From the IMG/VR virus record IMGVR_UViG_3300027747_002221, positions 124,001-188,000 of that record: DNA of 64,000 bases, one strand, 5' to 3'. Within the stretch, counting starts at the first letter, position 1; every line of letters starts with the position of its first letter. Position numbers and translations under genes: made by a program. The notes below the pieces were generated by a model. It saw nothing but the letters and a program-made list of their open reading frames with translations, did not search any database and was not told the origin of the DNA. Of this stretch, positions 14,134 to 64,000 are shown one piece after another.

Positions 14134-14884
14134 TATCGTTTTCCTTAGTCCAGGTTACAATTTCCCATCGTCCATTATAATGTTCAACAAGAGCAGTACA
14201 AGATTCAACCCAGTCTCCGTCGTTCATATATATGATTCCATCAATCTCTTTAATCTCAGCATGATGTATATGTCCACAAATAACTCCATCATACCCTCGC
14301 TTTTTACAATATCCTGCGAGGTTGTTTTCAAACTGAAACATAAAGTCTGATGCTTTTTTTACTCTATGTTTTAAATACTTAGATAACGACCAATATCCAA
14401 ATCCAAATTTATGACGAACCCAATTAAAACGAGAATTCCAATCTAGAACTAAATCGTATAACTTATCGCCTAGAAATGCTAACCAAGGTGCAAGTCTAGT
14501 AATACCATCAAATAAATCACCGTGCGTTATCAGGTAGTGTTTACCATCAACACCTATATGTTCCGTTTGATTTTTTATTTCAATTAAACCAAAACTGAAA
14601 CCATATGGTATCATTGGCCTTAAGAATTCATCATGATTACCAGCAATGTAGATTACTCTTGTACCTCGTTTAGCGTGTCCAAGAATTCTTCGTACAACAT
14701 TGGTATGAGATTGCTTCCACCGCCATTTATTCTGTTGTATTTTCCATACATCAATAATATCACCTACAAGATATAAAGTCTCGCAAGTATTATGTTTTAA
14801 AAAATTATTTAACTTATCAGCTTGACAATCTCGAGTACCTAAATGAACATCACTTATGAATATTGTTTTATAGGTTCTTTGCAT
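14081..14884 (-). CDS. PlcP-like phospholipase C (LpxH/LpxH2-family metallophosphoesterase)
   Basis: TIFISDVHLGTRDCQA, LYLVGDIID, GNHDEFLR, HGDLFD, WLAFLGD, YWSLS, DGVICGHIHHA, NDGDWVESCTA. Confidence 0.85.
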   Translation of the reverse strand: MQRTYKTIFISDVHLGTRDCQADKLNNFLKHNTCETLYLVGDIIDVWKIQQNKWRWKQSHTNVVRRILGHAKRGTRVIYIAGNHDEFLRPMIPYGFSFGLIEIKNQTEHIGVDGKHYLITHGDLFDGITRLAPWLAFLGDKLYDLVLDWNSRFNWVRHKFGFGYWSLSKYLKHRVKKASDFMFQFENNLAGYCKKRGYDGVICGHIHHAEIKEIDGIIYMNDGDWVESCTALVEHYNGRWEIVTWTKENDNESSKNSKEVVSSVYQS

Positions 14885-14897
14885 AAGTTACCTTTAA

Positions 14898-15213
14898 ATT
14901 AATGATAGGTTATTCTGTTACGAGGAAACCTACCGAAACCCTAAGCAGTGTTTAGGCTGCTAATGCGAACTGTTCGTCGTTTGCGTTTACGTTTTTTGCT
15001 TGATTAACGGTCATCGCCTACCGTGCTGTCCACGCTGTTACTATTTGCCCTGTCGAAACCAATGTCAGGCCCATTAGAAAGAACTCTTTAGTATAGTCTA
15101 TAGCACTTGTCTGTCTCTATACAGGATGAAAAATTCTTTCTGGTGGACCTGGCGGGAGTCGAACCCGCGTCCAGAACATATTTCTCTTTGCTTCATACAG
15201 CAATAACTTACTC
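14898..15213 (-). ncRNA. ssrA: tmRNA, circularly permuted two-piece form
   Basis: Minus strand: T-arm GCGGG-TTCGACT-CCCGC and ...CAGGTCCACCA (ends 15141) come before GGGCCTGACATTGGTTTCGACAGG (starts 15072); 7-bp acceptor stem with G3:U; tag frame ANDEQFALAA-TAA (14984-14952). Outer ends are approximate. Confidence 0.95.
14901..14950 (-). repeat. Direct repeat copy A (3' part of the tmRNA coding piece)
   Basis: See 13240-13289. Confidence 0.92.
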
Positions 15214-15315
15214 TTTTACATTATAAAAAAGACTTTTTGCTATCCAGAACATATAGTTGACTACAACTAAGATGCCCCACATATAAACCCAATGCCAATT
15301 TTCAAACATAAGAAC

Positions 15316-53888: not shown

Positions 53889-54815
53889 TTATCCAACGAA
53901 TCTTATTGTGCCAGGACCAGTAAATGTATAATATACATTGCCATCTAAAGTAGTAACAGTATTACTACCTGTAATATTAGATGTTGCGGTAAAGTACGAA
54001 GGATGTGCAAAAATAACTACCCCTGATCCTCCAGATCCTCCGGCAGTGGCTCCACCTGCCGGATGGGAACCTGCGCCGCCACCGCCCCCAGTATTTACGT
54101 TGCCTGCAAGAGCAAGGAATGTTGTTCCCGGAGGATTTGCGCCGGATCCTCGACCGCCGCCGCCTAAACCACCAGGAGAAGGTGATAGGTTAGCAAAATT
54201 ATAATCTTGCCCACCTCCTCCTCCGCCTGCATAGTAATTACCATTTATCCATGCATTACCGTCACCACCTTGACCTTGCAAGGGACCTGTTCTTCCTGCA
54301 GTACCAGCACCACCGCCCCCACCTCCAGTTTGTCCAAGGGGTGGTCTTGAATTTGCAATTCCGCCAGGATTTCCTTGTCCAGCTGTACCTGCACCTCCAG
54401 TATTAGCTGGTCCTGAGTTGCCAGATGGATTTGCTGCTCCGCCACCCGATCCGCCAGATAGTCCATTAAAGTTAACGCCATCATTTGTACCGCCACCACC
54501 ACCACCTACGGCAATAAGATTTGCACTAAATGCTGCAGAAGATAGGGTTGACGGGGTGCCACTTGCACCTGCTGCACCGCCCCCAGCACCCCCGCCCCCC
54601 AGTGTAAAATTAAAACTATACGAAGATAAGGTGGGCACCACAATACTATTGGCAATATAGCCTCCAGCACCGCCGCCTCCAGCATAAAATGCCCCGCCGC
54701 CGCCACCCCCGCCTGCTACTAATAGATAACTTAATGTAAAGGGTGGTGGTGGCGGAGGTGGAGGGGTAAGGGTAAGCCCTGAAAATATTACACCGCCGCT
54801 AATTGTTAATGCCAT
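53889..54815 (-). CDS. Glycine-rich adhesin-like protein 5
   Basis: Close paralog of 50751..51695. Confidence 0.75.
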   Translation of the reverse strand: MALTISGGVIFSGLTLTPPPPPPPPFTLSYLLVAGGGGGGGAFYAGGGGAGGYIANSIVVPTLSSYSFNFTLGGGGAGGGAAGASGTPSTLSSAAFSANLIAVGGGGGGTNDGVNFNGLSGGSGGGAANPSGNSGPANTGGAGTAGQGNPGGIANSRPPLGQTGGGGGGAGTAGRTGPLQGQGGDGNAWINGNYYAGGGGGGQDYNFANLSPSPGGLGGGGRGSGANPPGTTFLALAGNVNTGGGGGAGSHPAGGATAGGSGGSGVVIFAHPSYFTATSNITGSNTVTTLDGNVYYTFTGPGTIRFVG

Positions 54816-54823
54816 ATTGTTTC

Positions 54824-55774
54824 CTAATTAAAAATAATTGTTCCGGATTGCCAGAATCTGTAGATGATGTTGGCATTGGCATAGGTTACGTTTGGTGAAC
54901 CTGTGGTTGTTGCAGTTGCAAATGTATTTGGATAACGAATAAACGCAATACCAGAACCACCAGCAACACCATTAATAAATGGTGATCCGCTTGGGGAGGT
55001 TCCTCCACCGCCTGCACCACCTCCAGTATTTACGGTACCTACAGTACCCAAACCTGAGCCCACCGCCCCTGCGCCACCGCCACCTAAACCGCCTGTGCCT
55101 GCAGTTCCTCTACCGTTCCATGTGCCGCCACCACCACCGCCAGCATAATACACATTAGCACCTGTTATTGTAGAGGGTGATCCGTCTCCGCCTGAACCAG
55201 CACCACCAGCTCCGCCAGATCCACCAACTGCTCCTGCACCACCTCCACCCCCACCTCCATAATTATTACCAGGTGAACCCGACCCACCAGGATTGCCTTG
55301 TCCAGGCGTCCCTGTTCCGGCAGCACCTGCCGTTGGAGCAGGACCATAGCCTCCACCTCCACCTGATCCTCCAGGTTTTCCTGCATAACCAGTAGCAGAA
55401 GTTATACCGCCACCGCCACCGCCGCCAATGGCAATTACATTTGATGCATAGGATGCTGCAGTTATCGAAGTATTTGCGCCATTTGCACCTGCAAGAGTAG
55501 CTTCTACGTTAGCAGAACCTATACCTCCAGCACCACCTGCGCCAACTGTTATTGTATATAACGTACCGGGAGTGACTGCCAATGCACTATTGGTTATTAA
55601 TCCTCCTGCGCCAGCTCCAGCAACACCACCATCATTACCAACAGTGGCCCCTGAACCACCGCCCCCCGCAACAACTAAATATTGTACTGAACTAAGTGGG
55701 ACAGGTGGAGGTGGTTCAGATGCATATAACGCGCCGCCTACTAATGCCATTCCGCCTGTGATTGTAATTGACAT
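54824..55774 (-). CDS. Glycine-rich adhesin-like protein 6
   Basis: Same scaffold; ends RFWQSGTIIFN. Confidence 0.75.
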   Translation of the reverse strand: MSITITGGMALVGGALYASEPPPPVPLSSVQYLVVAGGGGSGATVGNDGGVAGAGAGGLITNSALAVTPGTLYTITVGAGGAGGIGSANVEATLAGANGANTSITAASYASNVIAIGGGGGGGITSATGYAGKPGGSGGGGGYGPAPTAGAAGTGTPGQGNPGGSGSPGNNYGGGGGGGAGAVGGSGGAGGAGSGGDGSPSTITGANVYYAGGGGGGTWNGRGTAGTGGLGGGGAGAVGSGLGTVGTVNTGGGAGGGGTSPSGSPFINGVAGGSGIAFIRYPNTFATATTTGSPNVTYANANIIYRFWQSGTIIFN

Positions 55775-55783
55775 ATTATGTTC

Positions 55784-56701
55784 CTAACTAAATGTGATTG
55801 TTCCTGAGCTATAGAAGTTGTATACAACATTTCCACCTGAAGATGTTACAACTACATTAGCTCCTGTGGTATTTGCAGCAGAATATGCAGAAGGATGACG
55901 CAAAACAACTAATCCAGACCCGCCGGTTGCTCCCACCCCTCCATACGAACTAGCCCAACCGCCACCGCCACCGCCACCACCAGTATTAGTATTACCATCT
56001 ATGCCGGCATTATTACTGAAATTACCAGCGCCACCGCCGCCTGTGCCACCTGTACCTTGTGTACCTGGTCCATTTCTAGTTCCGCCTCCACCGCCGCCTG
56101 CGTAATTTAATCCAGTTATACTAGATGATGTGCCAGCTCCACCATTACCAGCAACACCCGGTGTTATCCCATTTGCATTTACACCTGCAGAAGCAGAGCC
56201 ACCGCCACCGCCACCCAAATACGCGGGTGAAGTAGTGCCTGTGCCGCCTGCGTATCCTTCTACCGGACTATAACTGCCTTCATTTCCTGTGCCTCCTAAT
56301 GGGTGTCCTCCAGAACCACCTCCGCCGGATCCGCCATTTTGTCCCGGAAGCGTACCTGGCCCTTGATCTGCGCCGACCCCGCCACCTCCGCCAGTAGTGG
56401 AAATACTAACCACACCGCCTATTAATGATGAATTGGCGCCTTTGCCGCCCTGTTGAAGAGCACCGGCATTGGCCTGCCCTGCAGAACCTCCGCTGCCAAC
56501 AGTAATAGTATATGGGGTGCCTGGGGCAATAGTTACGGTAGATTGTCTTAATCCTCCAGCACCACCGCCTCCCCCGCTATTACCGGCACCTCCGCCCCCA
56601 CCTGCAACTATTAGATAATCTATTAAACTAAGTGGGGGAAGCGGCACAAATACGGATAGCCCGTTTGATATTGCCACTCCGCCTGTGAATATAACTGGCA
56701 T
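55784..56701 (-). CDS. Glycine-rich adhesin-like protein 7
   Basis: C-terminus closely matches 46400..47296. Confidence 0.75.
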   Translation of the reverse strand: MPVIFTGGVAISNGLSVFVPLPPLSLIDYLIVAGGGGGAGNSGGGGGAGGLRQSTVTIAPGTPYTITVGSGGSAGQANAGALQQGGKGANSSLIGGVVSISTTGGGGGVGADQGPGTLPGQNGGSGGGGSGGHPLGGTGNEGSYSPVEGYAGGTGTTSPAYLGGGGGGSASAGVNANGITPGVAGNGGAGTSSSITGLNYAGGGGGGTRNGPGTQGTGGTGGGGAGNFSNNAGIDGNTNTGGGGGGGGWASSYGGVGATGGSGLVVLRHPSAYSAANTTGANVVVTSSGGNVVYNFYSSGTITFS

Positions 56702-56702
56702 A

Positions 56703-57107
56703 TTATTTTCCTATTTTTATATGCGTTCTATGTACTCTGCATTGTATTTGGCCATTATAATAATCTTCAGTTTCCAATACTCTGCGATCCATTTGTTCTC
56801 TTGCCTCAAGATAATTACAAGATCCCTTATTGGGACAAATATGTAATATCTCTCTTATAAATTTATCTGTTCCAACTGTCTCTACATCCTTTTTAACTTC
56901 TTCGGATGAGGACCAATAATCTCGCCAATCTGATTCGACCTTTATACGCTTCTTTTTGCCCTTAACCTGTTTAGTTTTACGAAACCAAAAAAGTTTTTTA
57001 CCTATGTATTTCCGTCCAGTAACAGTATTTGTAATCAAATATACATAACCATACGCAGTTTCTGGTATTTCCTCAAAGGGAATATTATTATAAAGCCACA
57101 TAAACAC
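56703..57107 (-). CDS. GIY-YIG nuclease (Seg-like, short)
   Basis: YGYVYLITNTVTGRKYIGKK...WRDYWSS...REILH. Confidence 0.82.
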   Translation of the reverse strand: MFMWLYNNIPFEEIPETAYGYVYLITNTVTGRKYIGKKLFWFRKTKQVKGKKKRIKVESDWRDYWSSSEEVKKDVETVGTDKFIREILHICPNKGSCNYLEAREQMDRRVLETEDYYNGQIQCRVHRTHIKIGK

Positions 57108-57123
57108 CTATCTAAATAAGTAT

Positions 57124-57492
57124 TTATTGTTCTATAATTTCCCATATATCTCCATCTTCGGAGTATCTGTCGGTATCCACACGGGGTGGGACTATGAAAT
57201 AGTCCTCAGGATCCGTCATTACATCCTCGAGTCGCTCGGTTGCCAAACCTTTGCCCATTGTGCCAGTCTTAATGAACATGGATGTCTGTACAGATTTCTT
57301 ATATCTGTGATATTCTGACTCATCCCGAGCCATATAATCTTTTTGCTTTTCAGAGAATACTTGTTTCTGTTCCTCCGACCATTGCCTTGAATTGGCACAA
57401 GCCCGGGTGCAAAATTTACCGGGCTTGTTGTGTTGTATCCCACACTTAGGACAGGTCTTCGTCGTCGTTGTCGAGATCTTCGTATTGCTCAT
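57124..57492 (-). CDS. Hypothetical zinc-finger protein
   Basis: CPKC...FCTRACAN. Confidence 0.6.
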   Translation of the reverse strand: MSNTKISTTTTKTCPKCGIQHNKPGKFCTRACANSRQWSEEQKQVFSEKQKDYMARDESEYHRYKKSVQTSMFIKTGTMGKGLATERLEDVMTDPEDYFIVPPRVDTDRYSEDGDIWEIIEQ

Positions 57493-57625
57493 CTATTTGA
57501 TCTTCATCTATAGTGGCACCGCAGAATGGACAAAACCCTACATTATAATGACGTTCGTCAAGATCATGTTTTATCTTGAAGACGGCATCACATTCGATGC
57601 ACTCGTGGTGTTTATTTTTTGCCAT
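57446..57625 (-). CDS. Small zinc-ribbon protein with acidic tail (59 aa)
   Basis: Manual: MAKNKHHECIECDAVF...FCPFCGATIDEDQ... Confidence 0.65.
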   Translation of the reverse strand: MAKNKHHECIECDAVFKIKHDLDERHYNVGFCPFCGATIDEDQIDEQYEDLDNDDEDLS

Positions 57626-58065
57626 GTGTCGATTCCTCTCTTCTTTGCTTCAGTTTCAAATACTCTTGTTCTTAGATCTGATGAACTAAAGTAATGATCT
57701 CGCTTGTTAAAATAAATGTCAATTTTTCTTTTCTCACAGATAACTTTGCCTGTGTACTCAGTATCTCTATACTCTTCACCCAAGATACGAACATCAATAG
57801 GTAAAGACATAAAGATATCTTCAAGTTCTTTTTCTGTAGAATATACAATAATCTCATCGACGTGTTTACAAGCTGCAACTTGTATTTGTCGTTCGATTAT
57901 GGATTGTACGGGTTTGTTTTTACTTAACCTGTCGATTGTTGGGTCGACTTGGATTGCTGCGATTAAATGATCGCATTGTCTTTTTGCCTCTTCAAGCATG
58001 ATAACATGACCAGCATGAAAGAGATCAAAAGTACTGCAAGTAATTCCTATAATTTTATTACTCAT
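57571..58065 (-). CDS. Glycerol-3-phosphate cytidylyltransferase-like (TagD family)
   Basis: STFDLFHAGH, QVDPTIDR..KNKPVQSIIER, RDHYFSSSDLR. Confidence 0.88.
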   Translation of the reverse strand: MSNKIIGITCSTFDLFHAGHVIMLEEAKRQCDHLIAAIQVDPTIDRLSKNKPVQSIIERQIQVAACKHVDEIIVYSTEKELEDIFMSLPIDVRILGEEYRDTEYTGKVICEKRKIDIYFNKRDHYFSSSDLRTRVFETEAKKRGIDTWQKINTTSASNVMPSSR

Positions 58066-58529
58066 ATTTGCTCCACTTCAATTTTACATTGATTTAAAAA
58101 TTCTATACCATTAGTATTTCTATAAGGGGTACGATAGAATACTTTATTTATACCTGCCACATGAATCATTTTACTACATTCAAAACAAGGTGCATGGGTA
58201 ATATACATTGTAGCGCCCTCGCCTGATTCTGTCGAACGAGCTAATTTACCTATAGCATTTGACTCAGCATGAATTACCTCAGCTTTAGTCTTTAATGTAT
58301 AGTTTGCACCTTCGTATTCTTCGATGGATTGACCGACACCATAAGTAAAAGTTTCTCGTATTACATCTTCACAGTTGTTATCCCATCCCGCAGGAGTACC
58401 ATTATAACCTATAGATATAACCCTATCATCTTTAGTTATAATAGCACCAACCTTTAATCTTCTCGCATAAGATAGATCTGCATATGCCTCCGCAGCCGTC
58501 ATATGTGCATAATCAATTTTCTTCGGCAT
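58062..58529 (-). CDS. cd: dCMP deaminase
   Basis: ISIGYNGTP, HAESNAI, THAPCFECSK. Confidence 0.93.
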   Translation of the reverse strand: MPKKIDYAHMTAAEAYADLSYARRLKVGAIITKDDRVISIGYNGTPAGWDNNCEDVIRETFTYGVGQSIEEYEGANYTLKTKAEVIHAESNAIGKLARSTESGEGATMYITHAPCFECSKMIHVAGINKVFYRTPYRNTNGIEFLNQCKIEVEQI

Positions 58530-58695
58530 TCCATTTACCTTCAGGGCATTTTTCCCATTTAATTAATGTCTTGCCCCATATGGCGCAACCGCACGAATCA
58601 CAAAATTTTGCACCAATAATAATTTTTTTATGTTCACACGTATCACAAATTTGTCTGCGAACTATTACGTAGTTTGTTTTTTTATCGGAATCCAT
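58513..58695 (-). CDS. Small Cys-rich protein
   Basis: ICDTC...CDSCGC...KCPEGKW. Confidence 0.65.
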   Translation of the reverse strand: MDSDKKTNYVIVRRQICDTCEHKKIIIGAKFCDSCGCAIWGKTLIKWEKCPEGKWNAEEN

Positions 58696-58883
58696 TTTTT
58701 ACACCAATAATTAGGTTTCACCTTAGCATCCCAGGTTTTACAATATTTTGTTCCTGGTACATATGCCCCACAATTTGCGCAATTTTCTTTACTATTACCT
58801 AAAGCATATGCAGGAGGTAATTTTTTATTAATTAAAGTACCATCAGGATACTTTCTTTCTCTTATCTCATCAAAATTTTTCAT
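58665..58883 (-). CDS. HiPIP-like small Fe-S protein
   Basis: Y...ENCANC...YC..W...V..NYWCKKW four-Cys pattern; start MKNFDE. Confidence 0.5.
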   Translation of the reverse strand: MKNFDEIRERKYPDGTLINKKLPPAYALGNSKENCANCGAYVPGTKYCKTWDAKVKPNYWCKKWIPIKKQTT

Positions 58884-59863
58884 GCAGCCTTTCCCCACAC
58901 ATCATGCCAGTTTCCTGACAAGGCACCTTTTGCGTAGTCTGTTGCTCTGTTTTCAAAGAAATTAGTATGCGTTGGAGCATTGATCATTTCTTCAACCCAT
59001 GGTAAAGGATTCTTTTTACGCTTAAAGATGCCTTTTAGTCCAAGACTAATTAGACGTCTGTCAGCAATGTAACGAATATATTCCTTTACGTCGTTCTCTG
59101 TTAACCCTTCGATAGCGCCAGATTTGAAAGACAGTTCAATAAACTTATCTTCAAGACTAACCATCTTCTCCGCAATCGAGTAGATCTTTTCTTTGAGAGT
59201 ATCATTCCATATCTCCTTATTTTCTTCGATGTAGTTACGGAATAATTTAATCATGCCCTCGGCGTGTTGTGTCTCATCAACAATAGACCAAGTAACAATT
59301 TGTCCCATACCGCGCATCTTACCCATACGAGGGAAGTTAAGTAACATAATAAAGGAACTGAATAGTTGCATACCTTCAGTAAATGCGCTGAACACCGCAA
59401 TATGTTCTGCGGTTGAAGCAATCGTACCATTCTTAGATGAAATATCAAGAACAAAGTCATGCTTATCTTTCATTTCTTGATATTCTAGAAATTGATTGTA
59501 AGTTGTTTCTGGTAATCCTAGTGTCTCAATTAAATGAGAATATGCCGCAATATGTAATGCCTCACGGGCTGCAAAACCCATAAGCATCATTCTTATTTCA
59601 GGTTGCGGAAAGTAAGGTAGATAATTTTTGACATATCCACCAGCGACATCAATATCTCCCTGAGTAAAGAATCGGAAGATGTGCGTAAGGAATTGTTTTT
59701 CTTCATTTGATAATTTCTTTTTCCAATCTTTAACATCCTCATGCATGGGTACTTCGGTATGTAACCAATGGCTTTGTTCATGTTTTAACCATGCATCATA
59801 TGCCCAGGGGTAATTAAAGGGTTTAAACGAATTTCTATCATCCGTCATTTTTGTCTTTTTCAT
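58880..59863 (-). CDS. nrdB: Ribonucleotide reductase class Ia beta subunit
   Basis: FFTQGDIDV, EALHIAAYS (E-x-x-H, radical Tyr), EGMQLFSSF, DETQH, NFFE. Confidence 0.96.
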   Translation of the reverse strand: MKKTKMTDDRNSFKPFNYPWAYDAWLKHEQSHWLHTEVPMHEDVKDWKKKLSNEEKQFLTHIFRFFTQGDIDVAGGYVKNYLPYFPQPEIRMMLMGFAAREALHIAAYSHLIETLGLPETTYNQFLEYQEMKDKHDFVLDISSKNGTIASTAEHIAVFSAFTEGMQLFSSFIMLLNFPRMGKMRGMGQIVTWSIVDETQHAEGMIKLFRNYIEENKEIWNDTLKEKIYSIAEKMVSLEDKFIELSFKSGAIEGLTENDVKEYIRYIADRRLISLGLKGIFKRKKNPLPWVEEMINAPTHTNFFENRATDYAKGALSGNWHDVWGKAA

Positions 59864-59878
59864 TTTTGCCTATTCTTT

Positions 59879-60202
59879 TTATACAGAAAAACTACTACCA
59901 CAACCACAGGTTGTTTCCGCATTTGGATTTTTTATAACAAACTGTGAGCCTTGTATATCTTCTTTGTAATCTATGCTTGCACCTTGTAGATACTGCATGC
60001 TCATAGCATCTATTAATATTTTAGTTTTTTCGAGAGGTATTTCAAAATCATCCTCATTCATTACCTCATCAAATGTAAACCCATAGCTCATTCCACTACA
60101 ACCACCACCTTGTACAAATGTCCTTAAACATAAATCGGGATTACCCTCTTCTATAAAAAGATCTAAAATTTTTGTCTTTGCTGATTCTGTTATGGTTATC
60201 AT
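59879..60202 (-). CDS. erpA: A-type Fe-S carrier, ErpA-like
   Basis: [21 protein letters not shown]...[18 protein letters not shown]. Confidence 0.85.
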
Positions 60203-60834
60203 TTTTGTCCCTCGTACATTACTGTGTTAGTTTCGCCGAGTGCCCATTTTGAATCCGTTTCAACTGACCATTTCTTTGTTGCAACTTTAAAGTCTGGGTA
60301 TTTTAGTTCTTTTGGATTACTACTTGGTTCTAATATGATTAAACGATTATTTGGCTGAGCAGCAAACTGACCATTATCACACTGGATGAAATTATAAGAC
60401 TTGTGATCCTCGACATCCTCGCTAAAACCTGTATCAAGTGTGTTAAAATCAGGATGAGCACTATCAACTGTAAAAAGATAAACACCATACATCCAATCTC
60501 CATTTTTTAATTTAAACTTACACTTCATTGATTGTAACTGTGCTTTCTTTATAACAGCTATATCATATGAAAGGCAATCCCACAACTGAAGATAATCTAA
60601 AGGTAGAGGTTCTCCCTCAATTGGTTTCCAACAATATGCATGCAGAGGTAATTTATCATACAATGCGCCATAATTATTTAGATATGATTCAATACGAAAT
60701 GCTTGGCCTCTTAGAGACTTAACACTAACCCACCAGCAAGGTTCAAGTTCTCCGTGACCTTTTTCAAAATCATAAAGAAATTCTTTGCGAACAAAACATT
60801 TTACTGTAGGAAGATTTGCTACGATATGTGCCAT
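60199..60834 (-). CDS. Conserved phage hypothetical protein
   Basis: 211 aa; [23 protein letters not shown]. Confidence 0.75.
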
Positions 60835-61161
60835 TTATACCCTAAAACTTTCTCCGCAACCACAGCGGTCTCGTTCGTTTGGATTTTTAAAATCGAATCC
60901 CTCGTTTAGACCATTTCTAACCCAATCCATGGTCAATCCTTTCAGATATATATCACTTTTTATATCAACTAAAACTATAAAATCTTTATGTGCGTAATTA
61001 ATTACACCTACGGTTTCTTCATACTTATCCACATATTCAAGTGTATATGCCAATCCACTACAACCTGTAGTTTTTACGCCTAGTTTAATACCAACACCCT
61101 TACCCCGTTTCTGAAGTTGAGTTTTAATTTTATCATATGCTTTTTCAGTTAACGAGATCAT
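60835..61161 (-). CDS. iscA: A-type Fe-S carrier IscA
   Basis: RGKGVGIKLGVKTTGCSGLAY...GLNEGFDFKNPNERDRCGCGESF. Confidence 0.92.
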   Translation of the reverse strand: MISLTEKAYDKIKTQLQKRGKGVGIKLGVKTTGCSGLAYTLEYVDKYEETVGVINYAHKDFIVLVDIKSDIYLKGLTMDWVRNGLNEGFDFKNPNERDRCGCGESFRV

Positions 61162-61528
61162 GTTTCTTCTTATAGTCTAATACTGCAGCCTTTATAGCAT
61201 CTTCTGCTAAAATAGAACAATGTATTTTTACTGGCGGGAGAGCAAGTTCTTCAGCAATGGCACTATTTTTGATAGTGAATGCTTCATCCAATGTTTTCCC
61301 TTTGACCCATTCTGTAACGAGTGAACTAGAAGCGATTGCGGAACCACATCCATATGTCTTGAAGCGAGCATCTCTAATAATACCATCTTCTACCTTTATT
61401 TGTAGTTTCATGACGTCGCCACAAGCAGGTGCCCCCACCATACCTGTGCCGATTGTGTCGTCTGTCTCAAACTTGCCTACATTCCGAGGGTTTTCGTAAT
61501 GATCGATTACCTTATCTGAGTAGGCCAT
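61145..61528 (-). CDS. iscU: Fe-S scaffold IscU
   Basis: MAYSDKVIDHYENPRNVG, GAPACGDVM, FKTYGCGSAIASSS, LPPVKIHCS. Confidence 0.96.
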   Translation of the reverse strand: MAYSDKVIDHYENPRNVGKFETDDTIGTGMVGAPACGDVMKLQIKVEDGIIRDARFKTYGCGSAIASSSLVTEWVKGKTLDEAFTIKNSAIAEELALPPVKIHCSILAEDAIKAAVLDYKKKHDLVN

Positions 61529-61531
61529 ATA

Positions 61532-61780
61532 TTACCAAGTTACTTCGCCGCTAGAAATCTTTCTTAGGCCCATATTAATAGCACCCATTAAAAGCATTTG
61601 ATATTCCGCAGGAACTACAAAGCCATAATTTGTTTGTACTATTACTAATACACCTGCTACAATATTAGCCCAGAAAGTTTTACTATAGTACCACTTTTTG
61701 CCTGTTGCTTCGCTTACCATTGCTTCGTTAACTGCTTCAATAATTTTTTCGTTAACTACTGTTTCTTTTTTCGTTGCCAT
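61532..61780 (-). CDS. Small membrane protein (holin-like)
   Basis: KKWYYSKTFWAN followed by two hydrophobic segments. Confidence 0.5.
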   Translation of the reverse strand: MATKKETVVNEKIIEAVNEAMVSEATGKKWYYSKTFWANIVAGVLVIVQTNYGFVVPAEYQMLLMGAINMGLRKISSGEVTW

Positions 61781-61838
61781 TTTATTTCCTTATTTTTAGA
61801 TGTTTACCGCCGCATAATGGGCATTCTTCTTACATAAT

Positions 61839-62006
61839 TTAATTATTTCCCTTGACAATATTATCGTCTTTATCTCGGCATTCCGCGCATTCGCACTTAT
61901 TACAAGAACAAGGGTTAGAAGGGCAGGAGCCCTGACAATGAGCGTCGTGTCCACACCTTTGGCATGTGTATCTGACGTATTGTTCATGTAAAAATGGTGT
62001 TTGCAT
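61839..62006 (-). CDS. Small Cys/His-rich protein (55 aa)
   Basis: CQRCGHDAHCQGSCPSNPCSCNKCECAEC. Confidence 0.6.
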   Translation of the reverse strand: MQTPFLHEQYVRYTCQRCGHDAHCQGSCPSNPCSCNKCECAECRDKDDNIVKGNN

Positions 62007-62008
62007 AT

Positions 62009-63820
62009 TTAACCTTCGCAAGCCAAACAAGTATCACCCTCAATTATTGCTTTCATATCTAATTCTTTAATAACTTCTCTTTCAATTCTTTTAGAGACTT
62101 TATCTGCTTTGCCAATCTTTTCAGAGCGGCAATAGTAAAGGGTTTTCAATCCTTGCTTCCATGCCATAAAATGTACAGCATGCAAATACATAATATTTGC
62201 ATCTGGTCTAAAGAACAGATTAACAGATTGTGCTTGATCTATATATTGCTGTCTATCGGCGGCGTGTTGGATAACCCAGCGTTGGTCTATTTCCATAGAT
62301 GTTTTAAATACATCTTTTGTCCAATCATTCATCCAAGTTAAGTGTTGTACTGACCCGTCATTCGCAATAATTGAAGACCAAATGTCATTATAATCATTTT
62401 GAGATATTGTTCCACTATCGCTAGATAAATGATCTTGAATAACTCTATCAAGCCATTTATTTTTATTAAGCATAGAACCACTTAGTGTATCTTGTCTATA
62501 GGCGTTAGCACGTAATGGCTCAACGGAAGGAGAAGTATTTCCCATAATAATAGAAGAAGAAGCGTTAGGAGCAATAGCAAGCATATGAGAAAAACGTCTA
62601 CCTGTACCTGCAGCATCGGGCGCCTCGCCCCTCTCATGTCCTAATTTAAGATTTGCTTCATCTAATCCTTTTCGAATATGCTTAAAAATTTGTAGGTTTC
62701 TTCCCACTGCCATGGACGATTCCCAAGGAATATTATTTTTTTGTAAAAAGGCGTGCCAGCCTAGGGCTCCAATACCAATGCTACGCTCATTCCGAGCAGA
62801 GTAAATAGCCCTGGAAATGGCACTAGGTGCATTATCAATAAAATACTGTAGAACATTATCAAGCATTTCAGCAACATCAGCAAGGAAGAGAGGGTCAGAT
62901 TTCCATTCATCGTAGTACTCCAAATTTAAAGATGACAAACAACATACCGCGGTGCGTTCTTTATCTGTAGGTAAAATAATCTCAGAACATAAATTAGATT
63001 GTTTGATACTTAAACCAAGCTTCTTCTGAAAATCTGGCATCGCTCTGTTACTGGTATCAATAAAATGTAGATATGGTTCACCTGTTTGCATTCTCATTTC
63101 AATAATACGTTGCCATAATTCTCTAGCTGAAATAGTATCACGTACTTCTCCGGAATGAGGATCTTTTAATTCCCATGTATCATCTGCATCTTTATCCAAC
63201 ATACATTTTTCAACTAATTGCATAAAGTTATCAGTAATATTAATACCGTGATGTAAATTAAGTGTCCTCATATTAGGATCACCTGTTGGTTTACGCATTT
63301 CTAAAAATATGAGAATATCCGGATGAGAAATATCAAGATAAGCGGCATAACTACCCCTACGAGTCCTACCTTGTCTATAAGCGAGAGATGATGCGTCATA
63401 TGTGCGAAGGTGGGGCATAACTCCAACCGACTTATCATCCGCTGAACGAATTCCAATACCAATTCCAACTCCTCCGCCCAGCATACTGAGCCAATTTACT
63501 TCCGCCAAACAATCAACCAAGCCTTCAGCACTATCATGTAGATAAGGGAGAAAGCAAGAAATAGGAAGACCACGCTTACTGCGACCAAAGCTAAGAATGG
63601 GAGTAGAATAAGAAAGCCAATGCTTGGATGAGTACTCATAAAGTCTCTGTGAATGCTTCTCATTAGTGCCAAACGCTTTGGATACATATGCGAACCTTTC
63701 CTGAGGAGAAACCTCATCTTCTGTCATATAACTTTCTTTTAATCTTTTAATTCCCAATTCATCAAATAAACTATCTCTAGTATAATTGACATTAATCCCA
63801 TGGACTACATCTTTAGTCAT
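62009..63820 (-). CDS. nrdA: Ribonucleotide reductase class Ia alpha subunit (short; no ATP cone evident)
   Basis: PISCF, QGRTRRGSYAAYL, QSNLCSEI, AIAPNASSS, KTLYY, C-terminal CLACEG. Confidence 0.96.
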   Translation of the reverse strand: MTKDVVHGINVNYTRDSLFDELGIKRLKESYMTEDEVSPQERFAYVSKAFGTNEKHSQRLYEYSSKHWLSYSTPILSFGRSKRGLPISCFLPYLHDSAEGLVDCLAEVNWLSMLGGGVGIGIGIRSADDKSVGVMPHLRTYDASSLAYRQGRTRRGSYAAYLDISHPDILIFLEMRKPTGDPNMRTLNLHHGINITDNFMQLVEKCMLDKDADDTWELKDPHSGEVRDTISARELWQRIIEMRMQTGEPYLHFIDTSNRAMPDFQKKLGLSIKQSNLCSEIILPTDKERTAVCCLSSLNLEYYDEWKSDPLFLADVAEMLDNVLQYFIDNAPSAISRAIYSARNERSIGIGALGWHAFLQKNNIPWESSMAVGRNLQIFKHIRKGLDEANLKLGHERGEAPDAAGTGRRFSHMLAIAPNASSSIIMGNTSPSVEPLRANAYRQDTLSGSMLNKNKWLDRVIQDHLSSDSGTISQNDYNDIWSSIIANDGSVQHLTWMNDWTKDVFKTSMEIDQRWVIQHAADRQQYIDQAQSVNLFFRPDANIMYLHAVHFMAWKQGLKTLYYCRSEKIGKADKVSKRIEREVIKELDMKAIIEGDTCLACEG

Positions 63821-63837
63821 TCTTACTCCAATTTTTA

Positions 63838-64000
63838 TTATTTTACTGATTCAAAAATTTGTTTTTGAATTCGATACCATTCAACCCATGCATCATTTTT
63901 GACTGCACATTCATAATATGTCGTATAATTTATTGCTACTGTTTTAGATATATCACTTAGCTTAGCATCTTCTTTTAATTTTTCAAGTTGAGGACACTTA
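63838..64000 (-). CDS. Probable outer-membrane spanin (Rz1-like), 3' part only
   Basis: Manual: KCPQLEKL...NYTTYYECAVKNDAWVEWY..QKQIFESVK; starts beyond the window. Confidence 0.55.
   Translation of the reverse strand, partial: KCPQLEKLKEDAKLSDISKTVAINYTTYYECAVKNDAWVEWYRIQKQIFESVK

What the first reader, a model, noticed from the sequence alone, without database searches (positions are those of the whole stretch)
59879..61528. IscU + IscA + ErpA Fe-S assembly cassette inserted between nrdA and nrdB
Seen: an intact scaffold (three Cys and the LPPVK chaperone motif) and two distinct A-type carriers lie within the RNR operon; no IscS, HscAB or Fdx is present in the window. Single A-type carriers are known in phages, but a scaffold plus two carriers is more than I would expect. 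Inference: the phage boosts or redirects host ISC flux (borrowing host IscS), or uses A-type proteins as iron donors for NrdB.
Basis: partly seen in the sequence, partly recalled or inferred. Interest (0 to 1): 0.65.

Follow-up and report, generated by a model that had tools for sequence, protein, structure and literature searches.

The report
Phage-borne iron-sulfur cluster assembly relay
A 222-kb T4-like freshwater phage really does carry a working-looking iron-sulfur scaffold (IscU) and two different carrier proteins (IscA-type, ErpA-type) inside its ribonucleotide reductase gene array. This gene set recurs in many large uncultivated phages, most likely to feed the phage's own radical-SAM enzymes, so it is a good example of a known kind of viral helper gene rather than something new.

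Summary
On the minus strand between nrdA and nrdB lie IscU, an IscA-type carrier and an ErpA-type carrier, with every cluster ligand and the LPPVK motif intact.

It is neither contamination nor misassembly:
- The same 8 kb is colinear at 99.8-100% identity in four other metagenome contigs.
- GC content matches the phage.
- None of 160 viral loci has iscS, hscBA or fdx, whereas all 80 bacterial loci have iscS.
- Seventy viral IscU-IscA pairs form one clade apart from the betaproteobacterial pairs.

The complete genome has no IscS, HscA, HscB, Fdx, CyaY or Grx, so host partners are needed. It does encode five canonical radical-SAM enzymes, a QueE-like enzyme and a HiPIP-like 4-Cys protein fused by overlap to the end of nrdB.

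IscU plus one IscA-type and one ErpA-type carrier recurs in 7 of 23 other viral records examined. In the few near-complete records it goes with 6-12 radical-SAM genes.

Viral IscU and A-type carrier genes are already published (Nishimura 2017; Du 2022). My verdict is a new member of a known kind, of moderate interest. The link to RNR is unproven.

The parts
62009..63820 (-). nrdA, class I ribonucleotide reductase large subunit. It is 603 aa, has no ATP-cone and ends in C-L-A-C.
   Evidence: Pfam Ribonuc_red_lgC 343 bits and Ribonuc_red_lgN. C-terminus read.
61842..62006 (-). Small Cys-rich ORF (55 aa, 9 Cys), starting 2 nt after the nrdA stop codon. Function unknown.
   Evidence: Sequence read, Cys count, no Pfam hit. 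A 60%-identical copy is in L103.
61532..61780 (-). 82-aa ORF with hydrophobic segments, preceded by a Shine-Dalgarno-like AAGGAAA. Function unknown.
   Evidence: No significant family hit. Seen only in close relatives.
61145..61528 (-). IscU, the Fe-S cluster assembly scaffold.
   Evidence: TIGR01999 212 bits, above the 192.4 cut-off. Aligns to E. coli IscU at E 2e-64. Ligands and LPPVK are invariant in 104 viral copies.
60835..61161 (-). IscA-type (ATC-II) A-type carrier. It overlaps the end of iscU by 17 nt.
   Evidence: TIGR02011 is the best family at 127.9 bits, below its cut-off of 150.6. TIGR00049 scores 96.6 against 58.8. Best solved relative is E. coli IscA 1s98, E 8e-30. The three Cys are invariant in 78 viral copies.
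60199..60834 (-). u211, a conserved phage protein of unknown function. It abuts iscA and overlaps erpA by 4 nt. It belongs to the family labelled 'PurM' or 'ferredoxin' in cyanophage records.
   Evidence: phrog_3704, E 2e-81. 40-52% identical to the cyanomyophage genes so labelled. No Pfam or NCBIfam hit. 795 representative clusters. The AF2 model has pLDDT 93.3 and shows two small SH3/Tudor-like barrels, Z at most 5.8. No invariant Cys.
59879..60202 (-). ErpA-type (ATC-I) A-type carrier.
   Evidence: NF010147 161 bits, above the 117 cut-off. Best solved relative is HI1723 (2apn), E 3e-35. The three Cys are invariant in 47 viral copies.
58880..59863 (-). nrdB, class I RNR small subunit. It has an Asp/Glu/His metal-ligand pattern and a Tyr at the radical position.
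   Evidence: Pfam Ribonuc_red_sm 254.5 bits. Best PDB match 9dws_A, E 3e-101. D70, E101, H104, Y108, E163, E197 and H200 by inspection.
58665..58883 (-). HiPIP-like 72-aa protein with four invariant Cys. Its ATG overlaps the nrdB stop codon (ATGA).
   Evidence: The family profile hits HiPIP 3h31_A at E 9e-5. Pfam HIPIP matches 8 of 18 members, but the window copy scores 16.9, below the cut-off of 22. C35, C38, C48 and C61 are conserved. Seven of 8 weak Foldseek hits are HiPIPs. It sits directly after nrdB in all eight contexts seen.
58513..58695 (-). 60-aa Cys-rich ORF (CxxC...CxxCxC...C). Function unknown.
   Evidence: phrog_13558, E 2e-8. Conserved beside the HiPIP-like gene in L103, L146, L183 and L280.
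58062..58529 (-). dCMP deaminase, the next gene of the nucleotide-metabolism array.
   Evidence: Pfam dCMP_cyt_deam_1, E 4e-21.
57571..58065 (-). Cytidylyltransferase-like protein, at the end of the tightly packed array.
   Evidence: Pfam CTP_transf_like, E 1e-15.

Best explanation
**What it is.** The genes are resident phage genes in the nucleotide-metabolism module of a 222-kb T4-like myovirus. Its host is probably a freshwater betaproteobacterium.

**What they make.** Together they form the central relay of the ISC pathway:
- a scaffold on which clusters are built (IscU);
- a carrier that takes clusters from the scaffold (IscA-type, ATC-II);
- a carrier that inserts them into target proteins (ErpA-type, ATC-I).

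**What is borrowed.** The phage has no sulfur donor (IscS), electron donor (Fdx) or release chaperones (HscA/HscB), so it must use the host's. The near-host sequence of IscU and its intact LPPVK motif would allow this.

**Most likely role.** The relay raises [4Fe-4S] supply during infection, outside host control, for the phage's own Fe-S enzymes. These are five canonical radical-SAM enzymes (at least two with SPASM auxiliary-cluster domains, one B12-dependent), a QueE-like enzyme and a HiPIP-like protein.

**Shown and inferred.** Shown: gene identity, intact ligands, residency in the phage, the missing partners, the presence of clients and recurrence of the trio. Inferred: direction of cluster flow, use of host IscS and HscAB, and which proteins are the clients.
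For: - **Identity and intact motifs.**
- **Purifying selection.** All ligands and LPPVK are invariant in 104 viral IscU, 78 IscA-type and 47 ErpA-type copies, down to 46-52% identity.
- **Resident in the phage.**
  - Window 56001-64000 is colinear at 99.8-100% identity in four contigs from four other metagenomes.
  - GC of the Fe-S genes is 33-42% against 35.6% for the genome, and against a median of 58.6% for bacterial iscU.
  - The genes overlap or abut.
  - T4-like hallmark genes lie in the same record.
- **Trimmed set.** None of 160 viral loci has iscR, iscS, hscB, hscA or fdx. All 80 bacterial loci have iscS next to iscU, and 52 have the full operon.
- **Separate viral lineage.** 70 viral IscU+IscA pairs form one clade with SH-aLRT 99.
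- **Missing partners in the complete genome.**
- **Clients in the same genome.**
- **Recurrence and link to radical SAM.**
  - 7 of 23 other viral records have IscU plus exactly one IscA-type and one ErpA-type carrier.
  - Records at least 80% complete with the trio have 6, 12, 12 and 12 radical-SAM matches. The two with a single carrier have 1 and 0.
- **Published precedent.** Marine T4-like viral genomes with A-type carrier and/or IscU genes plus up to 12 radical-SAM genes have been described (PMC5332604).
- **Established knowledge.** The scaffold, ATC-II, ATC-I, target order follows the E. coli model of Vinella et al. 2009.
Against: - There are no expression or biochemical data.
- The Fe-S genes sit in the RNR array, more than 100 kb from the radical-SAM cluster, which lies at 0-13 kb of the record.
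- One relative that is 82% complete keeps an ErpA-type gene but has no IscU and no radical-SAM match (G001). A complete one has IscU and ErpA with a single radical-SAM gene (G005). Radical-SAM enzymes therefore cannot be the only clients.
- The correlation rests on six near-complete records that are not phylogenetically independent. Most other records are fragments.
- The tree used the quick method and only the bacterial IscU sequences closest to the query.
Confidence: 0.6

Rival explanations
1. The Fe-S genes serve the reductase itself. They mature the HiPIP-like 4-Cys protein that is translationally coupled to nrdB. That protein acts like E. coli YfaE, a small Fe-S electron donor that builds or restores the diferric-tyrosyl cofactor of NrdB. 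Alternatively, the A-type carriers hand iron directly to NrdB.
For: - The Fe-S genes lie between nrdA and nrdB here. In relatives they stay next to nrdA, nrdB and u211 in many different gene orders.
- 23 of 80 IscU-seeded viral loci have a class I RNR large subunit within 6 kb. These include an unrelated RNR type with an ATP-cone, only 21-24% identical.
- The HiPIP-like gene follows nrdB in all eight contexts seen, with an ATGA overlap here.
- The genome has no Fer2-type ferredoxin.
- NrdB has the Asp/Tyr pattern of a diferric-tyrosyl enzyme.
- Relatives with few or no radical-SAM genes still keep an ErpA-type gene beside the RNR genes.
- From established knowledge, yfaE occupies the same position after nrdB in E. 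coli.
Against: - The HiPIP-like gene does not co-vary with the Fe-S genes. It is absent from all 23 other IscU- or carrier-bearing records searched.
- It is present in relatives whose RNR array has no Fe-S gene within the 8-kb flanks examined (L180, L181, L183).
- The HiPIP assignment is sub-threshold for the window protein (16.9 bits against 22), and the fold match is weak.
- High-potential clusters are poor reductants.
- Position in a phage early-gene module is weak evidence of function.
- The sampling was seeded on u211, which itself sits by the RNR genes.
Confidence: 0.2
2. It is a generic host-support function. The phage copies keep the host's own Fe-S proteome working during infection (respiration, isoprenoid synthesis, DNA repair), when the host isc operon is shut off or clusters are damaged. 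Energy and precursors therefore keep flowing.
For: - IscU and erpA are widely reported as viral auxiliary genes, including in small podoviruses with no reported Fe-S enzymes of their own (PMC9038755; PMC13760526).
- Relatives with 0-1 radical-SAM genes still carry an ErpA-type gene.
- The phage IscU is near-identical to host-type IscU, so it could serve host targets.
Against: - It does not explain why the full trio goes with many phage radical-SAM genes in the near-complete records.
- Nothing in the sequence singles out host targets.
- It is not exclusive of the main explanation.
Confidence: 0.15
3. It is an artefact: host DNA contamination, a chimeric assembly, or decaying gene relics.
For: IscU is 82-88% identical to betaproteobacterial IscU. 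Some GenBank 'phage' records with IscU are in fact bacterial isc operons (L002).
Against: - The identical arrangement occurs in four independent contigs.
- Composition is phage-like.
- There are overlapping reading frames with phage genes on both sides.
- No cellular isc neighbours occur in 160 viral loci.
- The viral copies form their own clade.
- Catalytic residues are invariant.
Confidence: 0.01

Closest known systems
Viral Fe-S assembly auxiliary genes in marine environmental viral genomes (Nishimura et al. 2017, mSphere, PMC5332604)
   Same: - T4-like phage genomes carry IscU and/or an A-type carrier without IscS.
- The same genomes carry radical-SAM and other Fe-S genes.
- The viral IscU is of the proteobacterial type.
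   Different: - Here the scaffold and both carrier classes sit in one tightly packed array inside the RNR genes.
- The habitat and likely host are freshwater and betaproteobacterial, not marine.
- In the passages read (abstract, Fe-S section, conclusion and methods), the paper speaks of 'ATC and/or IscU' and does not split carriers into IscA- and ErpA-types.
E. coli and betaproteobacterial isc operon (iscR-iscS-iscU-iscA-hscB-hscA-fdx) plus unlinked erpA
   Same: - IscU is 82-88% identical to betaproteobacterial IscU, with all ligands and LPPVK.
- iscA lies directly after iscU.
- ErpA passes its equivalog cut-off.
   Different: - There is no regulator, desulfurase, chaperones or ferredoxin.
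- erpA is brought into the same array.
- The viral copies form a clade of their own and have phage-like base composition.
HMO-2011-type marine podoviruses with iscU and erpA (Du et al. 2022, ISME J, PMC9038755)
   Same: They are phage genomes carrying iscU and erpA as auxiliary genes.
   Different: - They are small podoviruses.
- No IscA-type carrier and no radical-SAM link are reported in the passage read.
E. coli nrdA-nrdB-yfaE operon (from established knowledge)
   Same: A small Cys-ligated Fe-S-type protein gene lies directly after nrdB.
   Different: YfaE is a [2Fe-2S] plant-type ferredoxin. The phage protein resembles a [4Fe-4S] HiPIP, and its function is untested.
Phage C48C1 (Kyanoviridae, OQ984149)
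   Same: It is a T4-like phage record with an IscU gene 77% identical to this one. It is the only GenBank phage hit above 60% identity found in a phage gene context. The other three are two bacterial contigs labelled as phage and one 1.9-kb unannotated fragment.
   Different: IscU sits alone among replication genes. No A-type carrier was found by tblastn in that record.

Membership tests
IscU scaffold (TIGR01999 / PF01592) | Scores above the curated equivalog cut-off | tested here: met
   212 bits against 192.4. Pfam NifU_N 178.6 bits.
IscU scaffold (TIGR01999 / PF01592) | Three Cys plus Asp and His cluster ligands, and the LPPVK HscA-binding motif | tested here: met
   C36, D38, C61, H103, C104 and LPPVK 97-101 align with E. 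coli IscU. They are invariant in 104 viral copies.
IscU scaffold (TIGR01999 / PF01592) | Lies in an isc operon beside iscS, hscB, hscA and fdx | tested here: not met
   None of these is in the window or the whole genome. None is in 160 viral loci, against iscS in all 80 bacterial loci. This is a context feature, not a property of the protein.
IscU scaffold (TIGR01999 / PF01592) | Assembles Fe-S clusters with IscS | not testable with these tools
   Needs biochemistry or complementation.
IscA (ATC-II A-type carrier, TIGR02011) | Scores above the curated equivalog cut-off | tested here: not met
   127.9 bits against 150.6. IscA is still the best-scoring family, and the A-type subfamily TIGR00049 is passed at 96.6 against 58.8. 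I therefore call it 'IscA-type'.
IscA (ATC-II A-type carrier, TIGR02011) | Cys-X(n)-Cys-Gly-Cys ligands, and a position directly after iscU | tested here: met
   C34, C100 and C102, invariant in 78 viral copies. It overlaps the iscU 3' end. Best solved relative is E. coli IscA.
ErpA (ATC-I A-type carrier, NF010147) | Scores above the curated equivalog cut-off and keeps the three Cys ligands | tested here: met
   161 bits against 117. C35, C99 and C101, invariant in 47 viral copies. Best solved relative is H. influenzae HI1723.
HiPIP (PF01355), for the 72-aa protein after nrdB | Scores above Pfam's gathering cut-off | tested here: not met
   16.9 bits against 22 for the window copy. 8 of 18 family members match at E up to 0.1, best 5e-5.
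HiPIP (PF01355), for the 72-aa protein after nrdB | Four Cys in HiPIP order and spacing, and profile similarity to solved HiPIPs | tested here: met
   C35-x2-C38-x9-C48-x12-C61 is conserved. The family profile hits 3h31_A at E 9e-5, aligning all four Cys.
HiPIP (PF01355), for the 72-aa protein after nrdB | HiPIP fold | tested here: inconclusive
   AF2 pLDDT 74.9. Seven of 8 Foldseek hits are HiPIPs, but the best E is 0.088 and TM about 0.36-0.40.
HiPIP (PF01355), for the 72-aa protein after nrdB | Exported to the periplasm with a Tat signal, as in classical HiPIPs | tested here: not met
   By inspection of the sequence, no signal peptide or twin-arginine motif precedes the domain.
PurM (AIR synthetase) or ferredoxin, the labels given to u211 relatives in GenBank and PHROGs | AIRS / AIRS_C domains, or a conserved Cys cluster-binding motif | tested here: not met
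   No Pfam or NCBIfam hit. No significant solved-structure relative by profile; the best E is 0.34. No invariant Cys among 70 diverse members. The model is two small beta-barrels, not a PurM or ferredoxin fold.
Viral Fe-S assembly auxiliary gene set (as in PMC5332604) | IscU and/or an A-type carrier in a bona fide phage genome, without IscS, alongside phage-encoded Fe-S enzymes | tested here: met
   T4-like hallmark genes. No IscS. Six radical-SAM-type genes.

The most novel reading that the evidence does not exclude
The RNR array of this phage lineage contains its own Fe-S redox partner. The HiPIP-like 4-Cys protein, translationally coupled to nrdB, would be a non-homologous counterpart of E. 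coli YfaE that builds or maintains the NrdB radical cofactor. The IscU, IscA and ErpA relay would be kept beside the RNR genes because it matures this partner, or supplies iron to NrdB. That would link Fe-S biogenesis directly to phage dNTP synthesis.
Probability: 0.15. Interest if true: 0.65.

Novelty: new member of a known kind. Interest (0 to 1): 0.4.

Why it matters
- **Scope of the phenomenon.** Large aquatic phages carry the whole middle section of the ISC pathway, not just a single Fe-S helper gene. They leave only sulfur mobilisation, electron supply and chaperone release to the host.
- **A testable pattern.** Among the few near-complete records, genomes with the full trio also have the most radical-SAM genes. 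Phages that bring many [4Fe-4S] enzymes may need to bring cluster-delivery capacity as well. This can be tested with standard E. coli complementation and co-expression assays.
- **Origin.** The viral IscU-IscA pairs form one clade. This points to a single capture from the betaproteobacterial-type operon followed by spread among phages.
- **Two by-products for annotators.** The widespread cyanophage gene labelled 'PurM' or 'ferredoxin' is neither. A HiPIP-like gene always follows nrdB in this lineage.

Tried and rejected
- **Complex prediction, NrdB with the HiPIP-like protein.** No verdict (score 0.00, controls not run). This is evidence neither for nor against binding.
- **The genome search on the records behind L180, L181 and L183.** The records are not held. 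I could not test whether HiPIP-bearing relatives carry Fe-S genes elsewhere.
- **Fold searches for u211.** Foldseek gave nothing at E <= 0.001. VIA-align wide gave only generic SH3/Tudor-like barrels, Z at most 5.8. Function remains unknown.
- **HiPIP-like family searched in 23 other IscU- or carrier-bearing viral records.** None was found. This argues against the HiPIP-like protein being the reason for the cassette.
- **Paper search for PDB entry 9DWS, the closest NrdB structure, and for HiPIP + phage + RNR.** Nothing relevant was found.
- **GenBank 'Acinetobacter phage MD-2021a' IscU and ErpA hits.** Rejected as phage examples. The IscU contig read carries a full isc operon beside ppiD, hupB and cyaA, and the ErpA hits are in the same assemblies.
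- **Contamination or misassembly.** Rejected.
- **Glutaredoxin and Fer2 ferredoxin in the genome.** None found.
Full report
**1. What is there**

ORF listing of window 54000-64000 shows one co-directional, tightly packed array on the minus strand:

| Gene | Coordinates | Note |
|---|---|---|
| nrdA | 62009-63820 | |
| 55-aa Cys-rich ORF | 61842-62006 | starts 2 nt after the nrdA stop; |
| 82-aa hydrophobic ORF | 61532-61780 | |
| iscU | 61145-61528 | |
| IscA-type gene | 60835-61161 | overlaps iscU by 17 nt |
| u211 (211-aa ORF) | 60199-60834 | abuts iscA |
| ErpA-type gene | 59879-60202 | 4-nt overlap with u211 |
| nrdB | 58880-59863 | |
| 72-aa 4-Cys ORF | 58665-58883 | ATG overlaps the nrdB stop as ATGA |
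| 60-aa Cys-rich ORF | 58513-58695 | |
| dCMP deaminase | 58062-58529 | |
| cytidylyltransferase-like gene | 57571-58065 | |

- IscU passes the NCBIfam equivalog cut-off (212 against 192.4 bits).
- ErpA passes its own (161 against 117).
- The third gene scores best as IscA (127.9) but falls below that equivalog cut-off (150.6). It does pass the general A-type carrier model.
- Against solved structures the three align best with E. coli IscU, H. influenzae ErpA (HI1723) and E. coli IscA respectively. All cluster ligands and the LPPVK motif are in place.

**2. The genome**

The window is bases 124001-188000 of a 222,055-bp IMG/VR virus record that CheckV rates complete.
- It has a T4-type portal, terminase, family-B DNA polymerase and gp46-like nuclease.
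- The portal is 53-55% identical to those of Pelagibacter phage Mosig, Methylophilales phage Melnitz and cyanomyoviruses.
- A phage-borne tmRNA at window 14879-15244 matches the betaproteobacterial tmRNA family.
- The closest cellular IscU sequences are nearly all from Burkholderiales and other Betaproteobacteria, many from lake metagenome bins.

A freshwater betaproteobacterial host is therefore likely. This is an inference.

**3. Not an artefact**

- Window 56001-64000 is colinear at 99.8-100% nucleotide identity in four contigs from four other metagenomes.
- The Fe-S genes have 33-42% GC. The genome has 35.6%, while bacterial iscU has a median of 58.6%.
- Among 160 IMG/VR loci fetched with IscU or u211 as query, none has iscR, iscS, hscB, hscA or fdx.
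- All 80 bacterial loci fetched with the same IscU query have iscS next to iscU. Fifty-two show the full iscR-iscS-iscU-iscA-hscB-hscA-fdx order.
- In a tree of concatenated IscU+IscA, the 70 viral pairs form one clade (SH-aLRT 99), separate from 77 betaproteobacterial pairs. This used the quick method with sampling limited to near relatives.
- The cluster ligands and LPPVK are invariant in 104 viral IscU, 78 viral IscA-type and 47 viral ErpA-type sequences, although identity falls to 46-52%.

These are functional genes that have long been evolving inside phages.

**4. What is missing and what could use the clusters**

The complete genome has no match to cysteine desulfurase, HSP70/HscA, HscB, plant-type ferredoxin, frataxin/CyaY or glutaredoxin. 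It has only these two A-type carriers.

It does have Fe-S clients.
- Five ORFs carry the canonical CxxxCxxC motif. Four lie at 3.6-12.7 kb of the record and one is cut by the record's start.
- At least two have SPASM auxiliary-cluster domains, and one has a B12-binding domain.
- A QueE-like ORF lies at 85.6-86.5 kb.

The 72-aa protein after nrdB belongs to a small family with four conserved Cys.
- Its profile matches solved HiPIPs (3h31_A, E 9e-5), and Pfam HIPIP matches 8 of 18 members.
- The window copy is below Pfam's cut-off and the predicted fold match is weak.

**5. How common the set is**

GenBank phage records rarely have these genes.
- Only Phage C48C1 carries a close IscU (77% identity) in a phage gene context. 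It sits alone there.
- ErpA-like hits are limited to two huge uncultured phages and to mislabelled or fragmentary records.

In IMG/VR the picture is different.
- At least 598 contigs carry IscU relatives.
- In 23 other viral records searched whole, 20 have IscU and 20 have at least one A-type carrier.
- Seven have exactly two carriers. In all seven one is IscA-type and one is ErpA-type.
- Counts of radical-SAM matches reach 12-15 per record.
- Among records at least 80% complete, those with the full trio have 6 (this genome), 12, 12 and 12. Those with a single ErpA-type carrier have 1 and 0.

The sample is small and not phylogenetically independent, but it agrees with Nishimura et al. 2017. 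They reported marine T4-like viral genomes with A-type carrier and/or IscU genes together with up to 12 radical-SAM genes. IscU and erpA have also been reported in HMO-2011-type podoviruses and in lake viromes.

**6. Mechanism**

In the established E. coli model, clusters are built on IscU with sulfur from IscS and electrons from Fdx. They are released by HscA/HscB acting at LPPVK, and pass through an ATC-II carrier (IscA) to the ATC-I carrier ErpA and then to [4Fe-4S] targets.

The phage encodes exactly the scaffold and the two carrier steps. I infer three things:
- it plugs into host IscS, Fdx and HscAB;
- it escapes host IscR control;
- it raises delivery capacity for the phage's own cluster-hungry enzymes.

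Confidence is about 0.6.

**7. The RNR question**

In favour of a link to the reductase:
- In relatives the Fe-S genes sit in many different orders, but nearly always beside nrdA, nrdB and u211.
- 23 of 80 IscU-seeded loci have a class I large subunit within 6 kb, including a different RNR type with an ATP-cone.
- The HiPIP-like gene follows nrdB in all eight contexts seen. This recalls yfaE after nrdB in E. coli.
- NrdB has the Asp/Tyr pattern of a diferric-tyrosyl enzyme.

Against it:
- The HiPIP-like gene is absent from all 23 other Fe-S-bearing records.
- It is present in relatives whose RNR arrays lack Fe-S genes within the flanks examined.
- A complex prediction gave no verdict.

I keep this as a rival at about 0.2.

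**8. u211**

This 211-aa protein is more conserved across relatives (about 90%) than NrdA (about 76%). It belongs to a large family of 795 representative clusters. It is the gene labelled 'PurM' or 'ferredoxin' in cyanomyophage records.
- It has no Pfam or NCBIfam match and no invariant Cys.
- A confident model (pLDDT 93.3) shows two small SH3/Tudor-like barrels.
- Neither label is supported, and its function is unknown.
- Nothing ties it to Fe-S chemistry except position.

**9. Verdict**

The finding is a clear, well-preserved example of an already described class of viral auxiliary genes. Three modest additions come out of this work:
- the full scaffold plus ATC-II plus ATC-I set recurs in large phages;
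- the viral IscU-IscA pairs form one clade;
- a HiPIP-like gene is coupled to nrdB in this lineage.

Noticed in passing
window 14879-15244 (-): A phage-encoded tmRNA with tag peptide ANDEQFALAA. It matches the betaproteobacterial tmRNA family (RF01850, 134 bits) and also the permuted-tmRNA model (RF04321, 138 bits). It is a hint to the host and an unusual cargo for a phage.
   Followed up: partly
window 60199-60834 (-): u211 belongs to the family that GenBank and PHROGs label 'PurM' or 'ferredoxin' in cyanomyophages and pelagiphages. No sequence or fold evidence supports either label. The confident model is two SH3/Tudor-like barrels with an invariant AQPNNR-type motif.
   Followed up: yes
window 58665-58883 (-), and L180, L181, L183, L280, L281: A 4-Cys HiPIP-like gene overlaps or directly follows nrdB in every relative examined, whether or not Fe-S assembly genes are nearby. 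It has no signal peptide, unlike classical periplasmic HiPIPs.
   Followed up: partly
window 61842-62006 (-) and 58513-58695 (-): Two further small Cys-rich ORFs lie in the same array: one of 55 aa with 9 Cys, and one of 60 aa with CxxC...CxxCxC...C. Both are conserved in close relatives and have unknown function.
   Followed up: no
genome 1-13000 (L171), outside the window: A cluster of radical-SAM genes (SPASM-type, B12-dependent and others) lies among ORFs without family matches. The record's first base cuts a radical-SAM ORF, so the record is either circularly permuted or slightly incomplete despite the 100% CheckV estimate. The pathway made by the cluster is unknown.
   Followed up: partly
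window 53889-56701 (-): Three tandem paralogous glycine-rich proteins (305-316 aa) have a poly-proline stretch near the N-terminus. One tested copy matches Pfam Gly_rich_2. Local GC rises to about 52%, against 35.6% for the genome.
   Followed up: no
window 56703-57107 (-): A SegE-like GIY-YIG homing endonuclease gene lies just downstream of the nucleotide-metabolism array. The same gene sits at the equivalent place in relatives L180, L181, L280 and L281.
   Followed up: no
L002 (CAKLQF020000009.1) and sister records: GenBank records named 'Acinetobacter phage MD-2021a' include bacterial chromosome contigs. The one read has a complete iscR-iscS-iscU-iscA-hscB-hscA-fdx operon. They would give false positives in any survey of phage Fe-S genes.
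   Followed up: yes
L005 6001-11933: In a different phage group, iscU-iscA is followed by a PD-(D/E)XK nuclease-like gene (sub-threshold match) and then by a class I RNR large subunit with an ATP-cone. That subunit is only about 21% identical to the window's NrdA.
   Followed up: partly
window 58880-59863 and 62009-63820 (-): NrdA is short (603 aa) and lacks an ATP-cone. NrdB's closest solved relative is PDB 9dws (E 3e-101), followed by Chlamydia-type small subunits. I could not find a paper for 9dws.
   Followed up: partly
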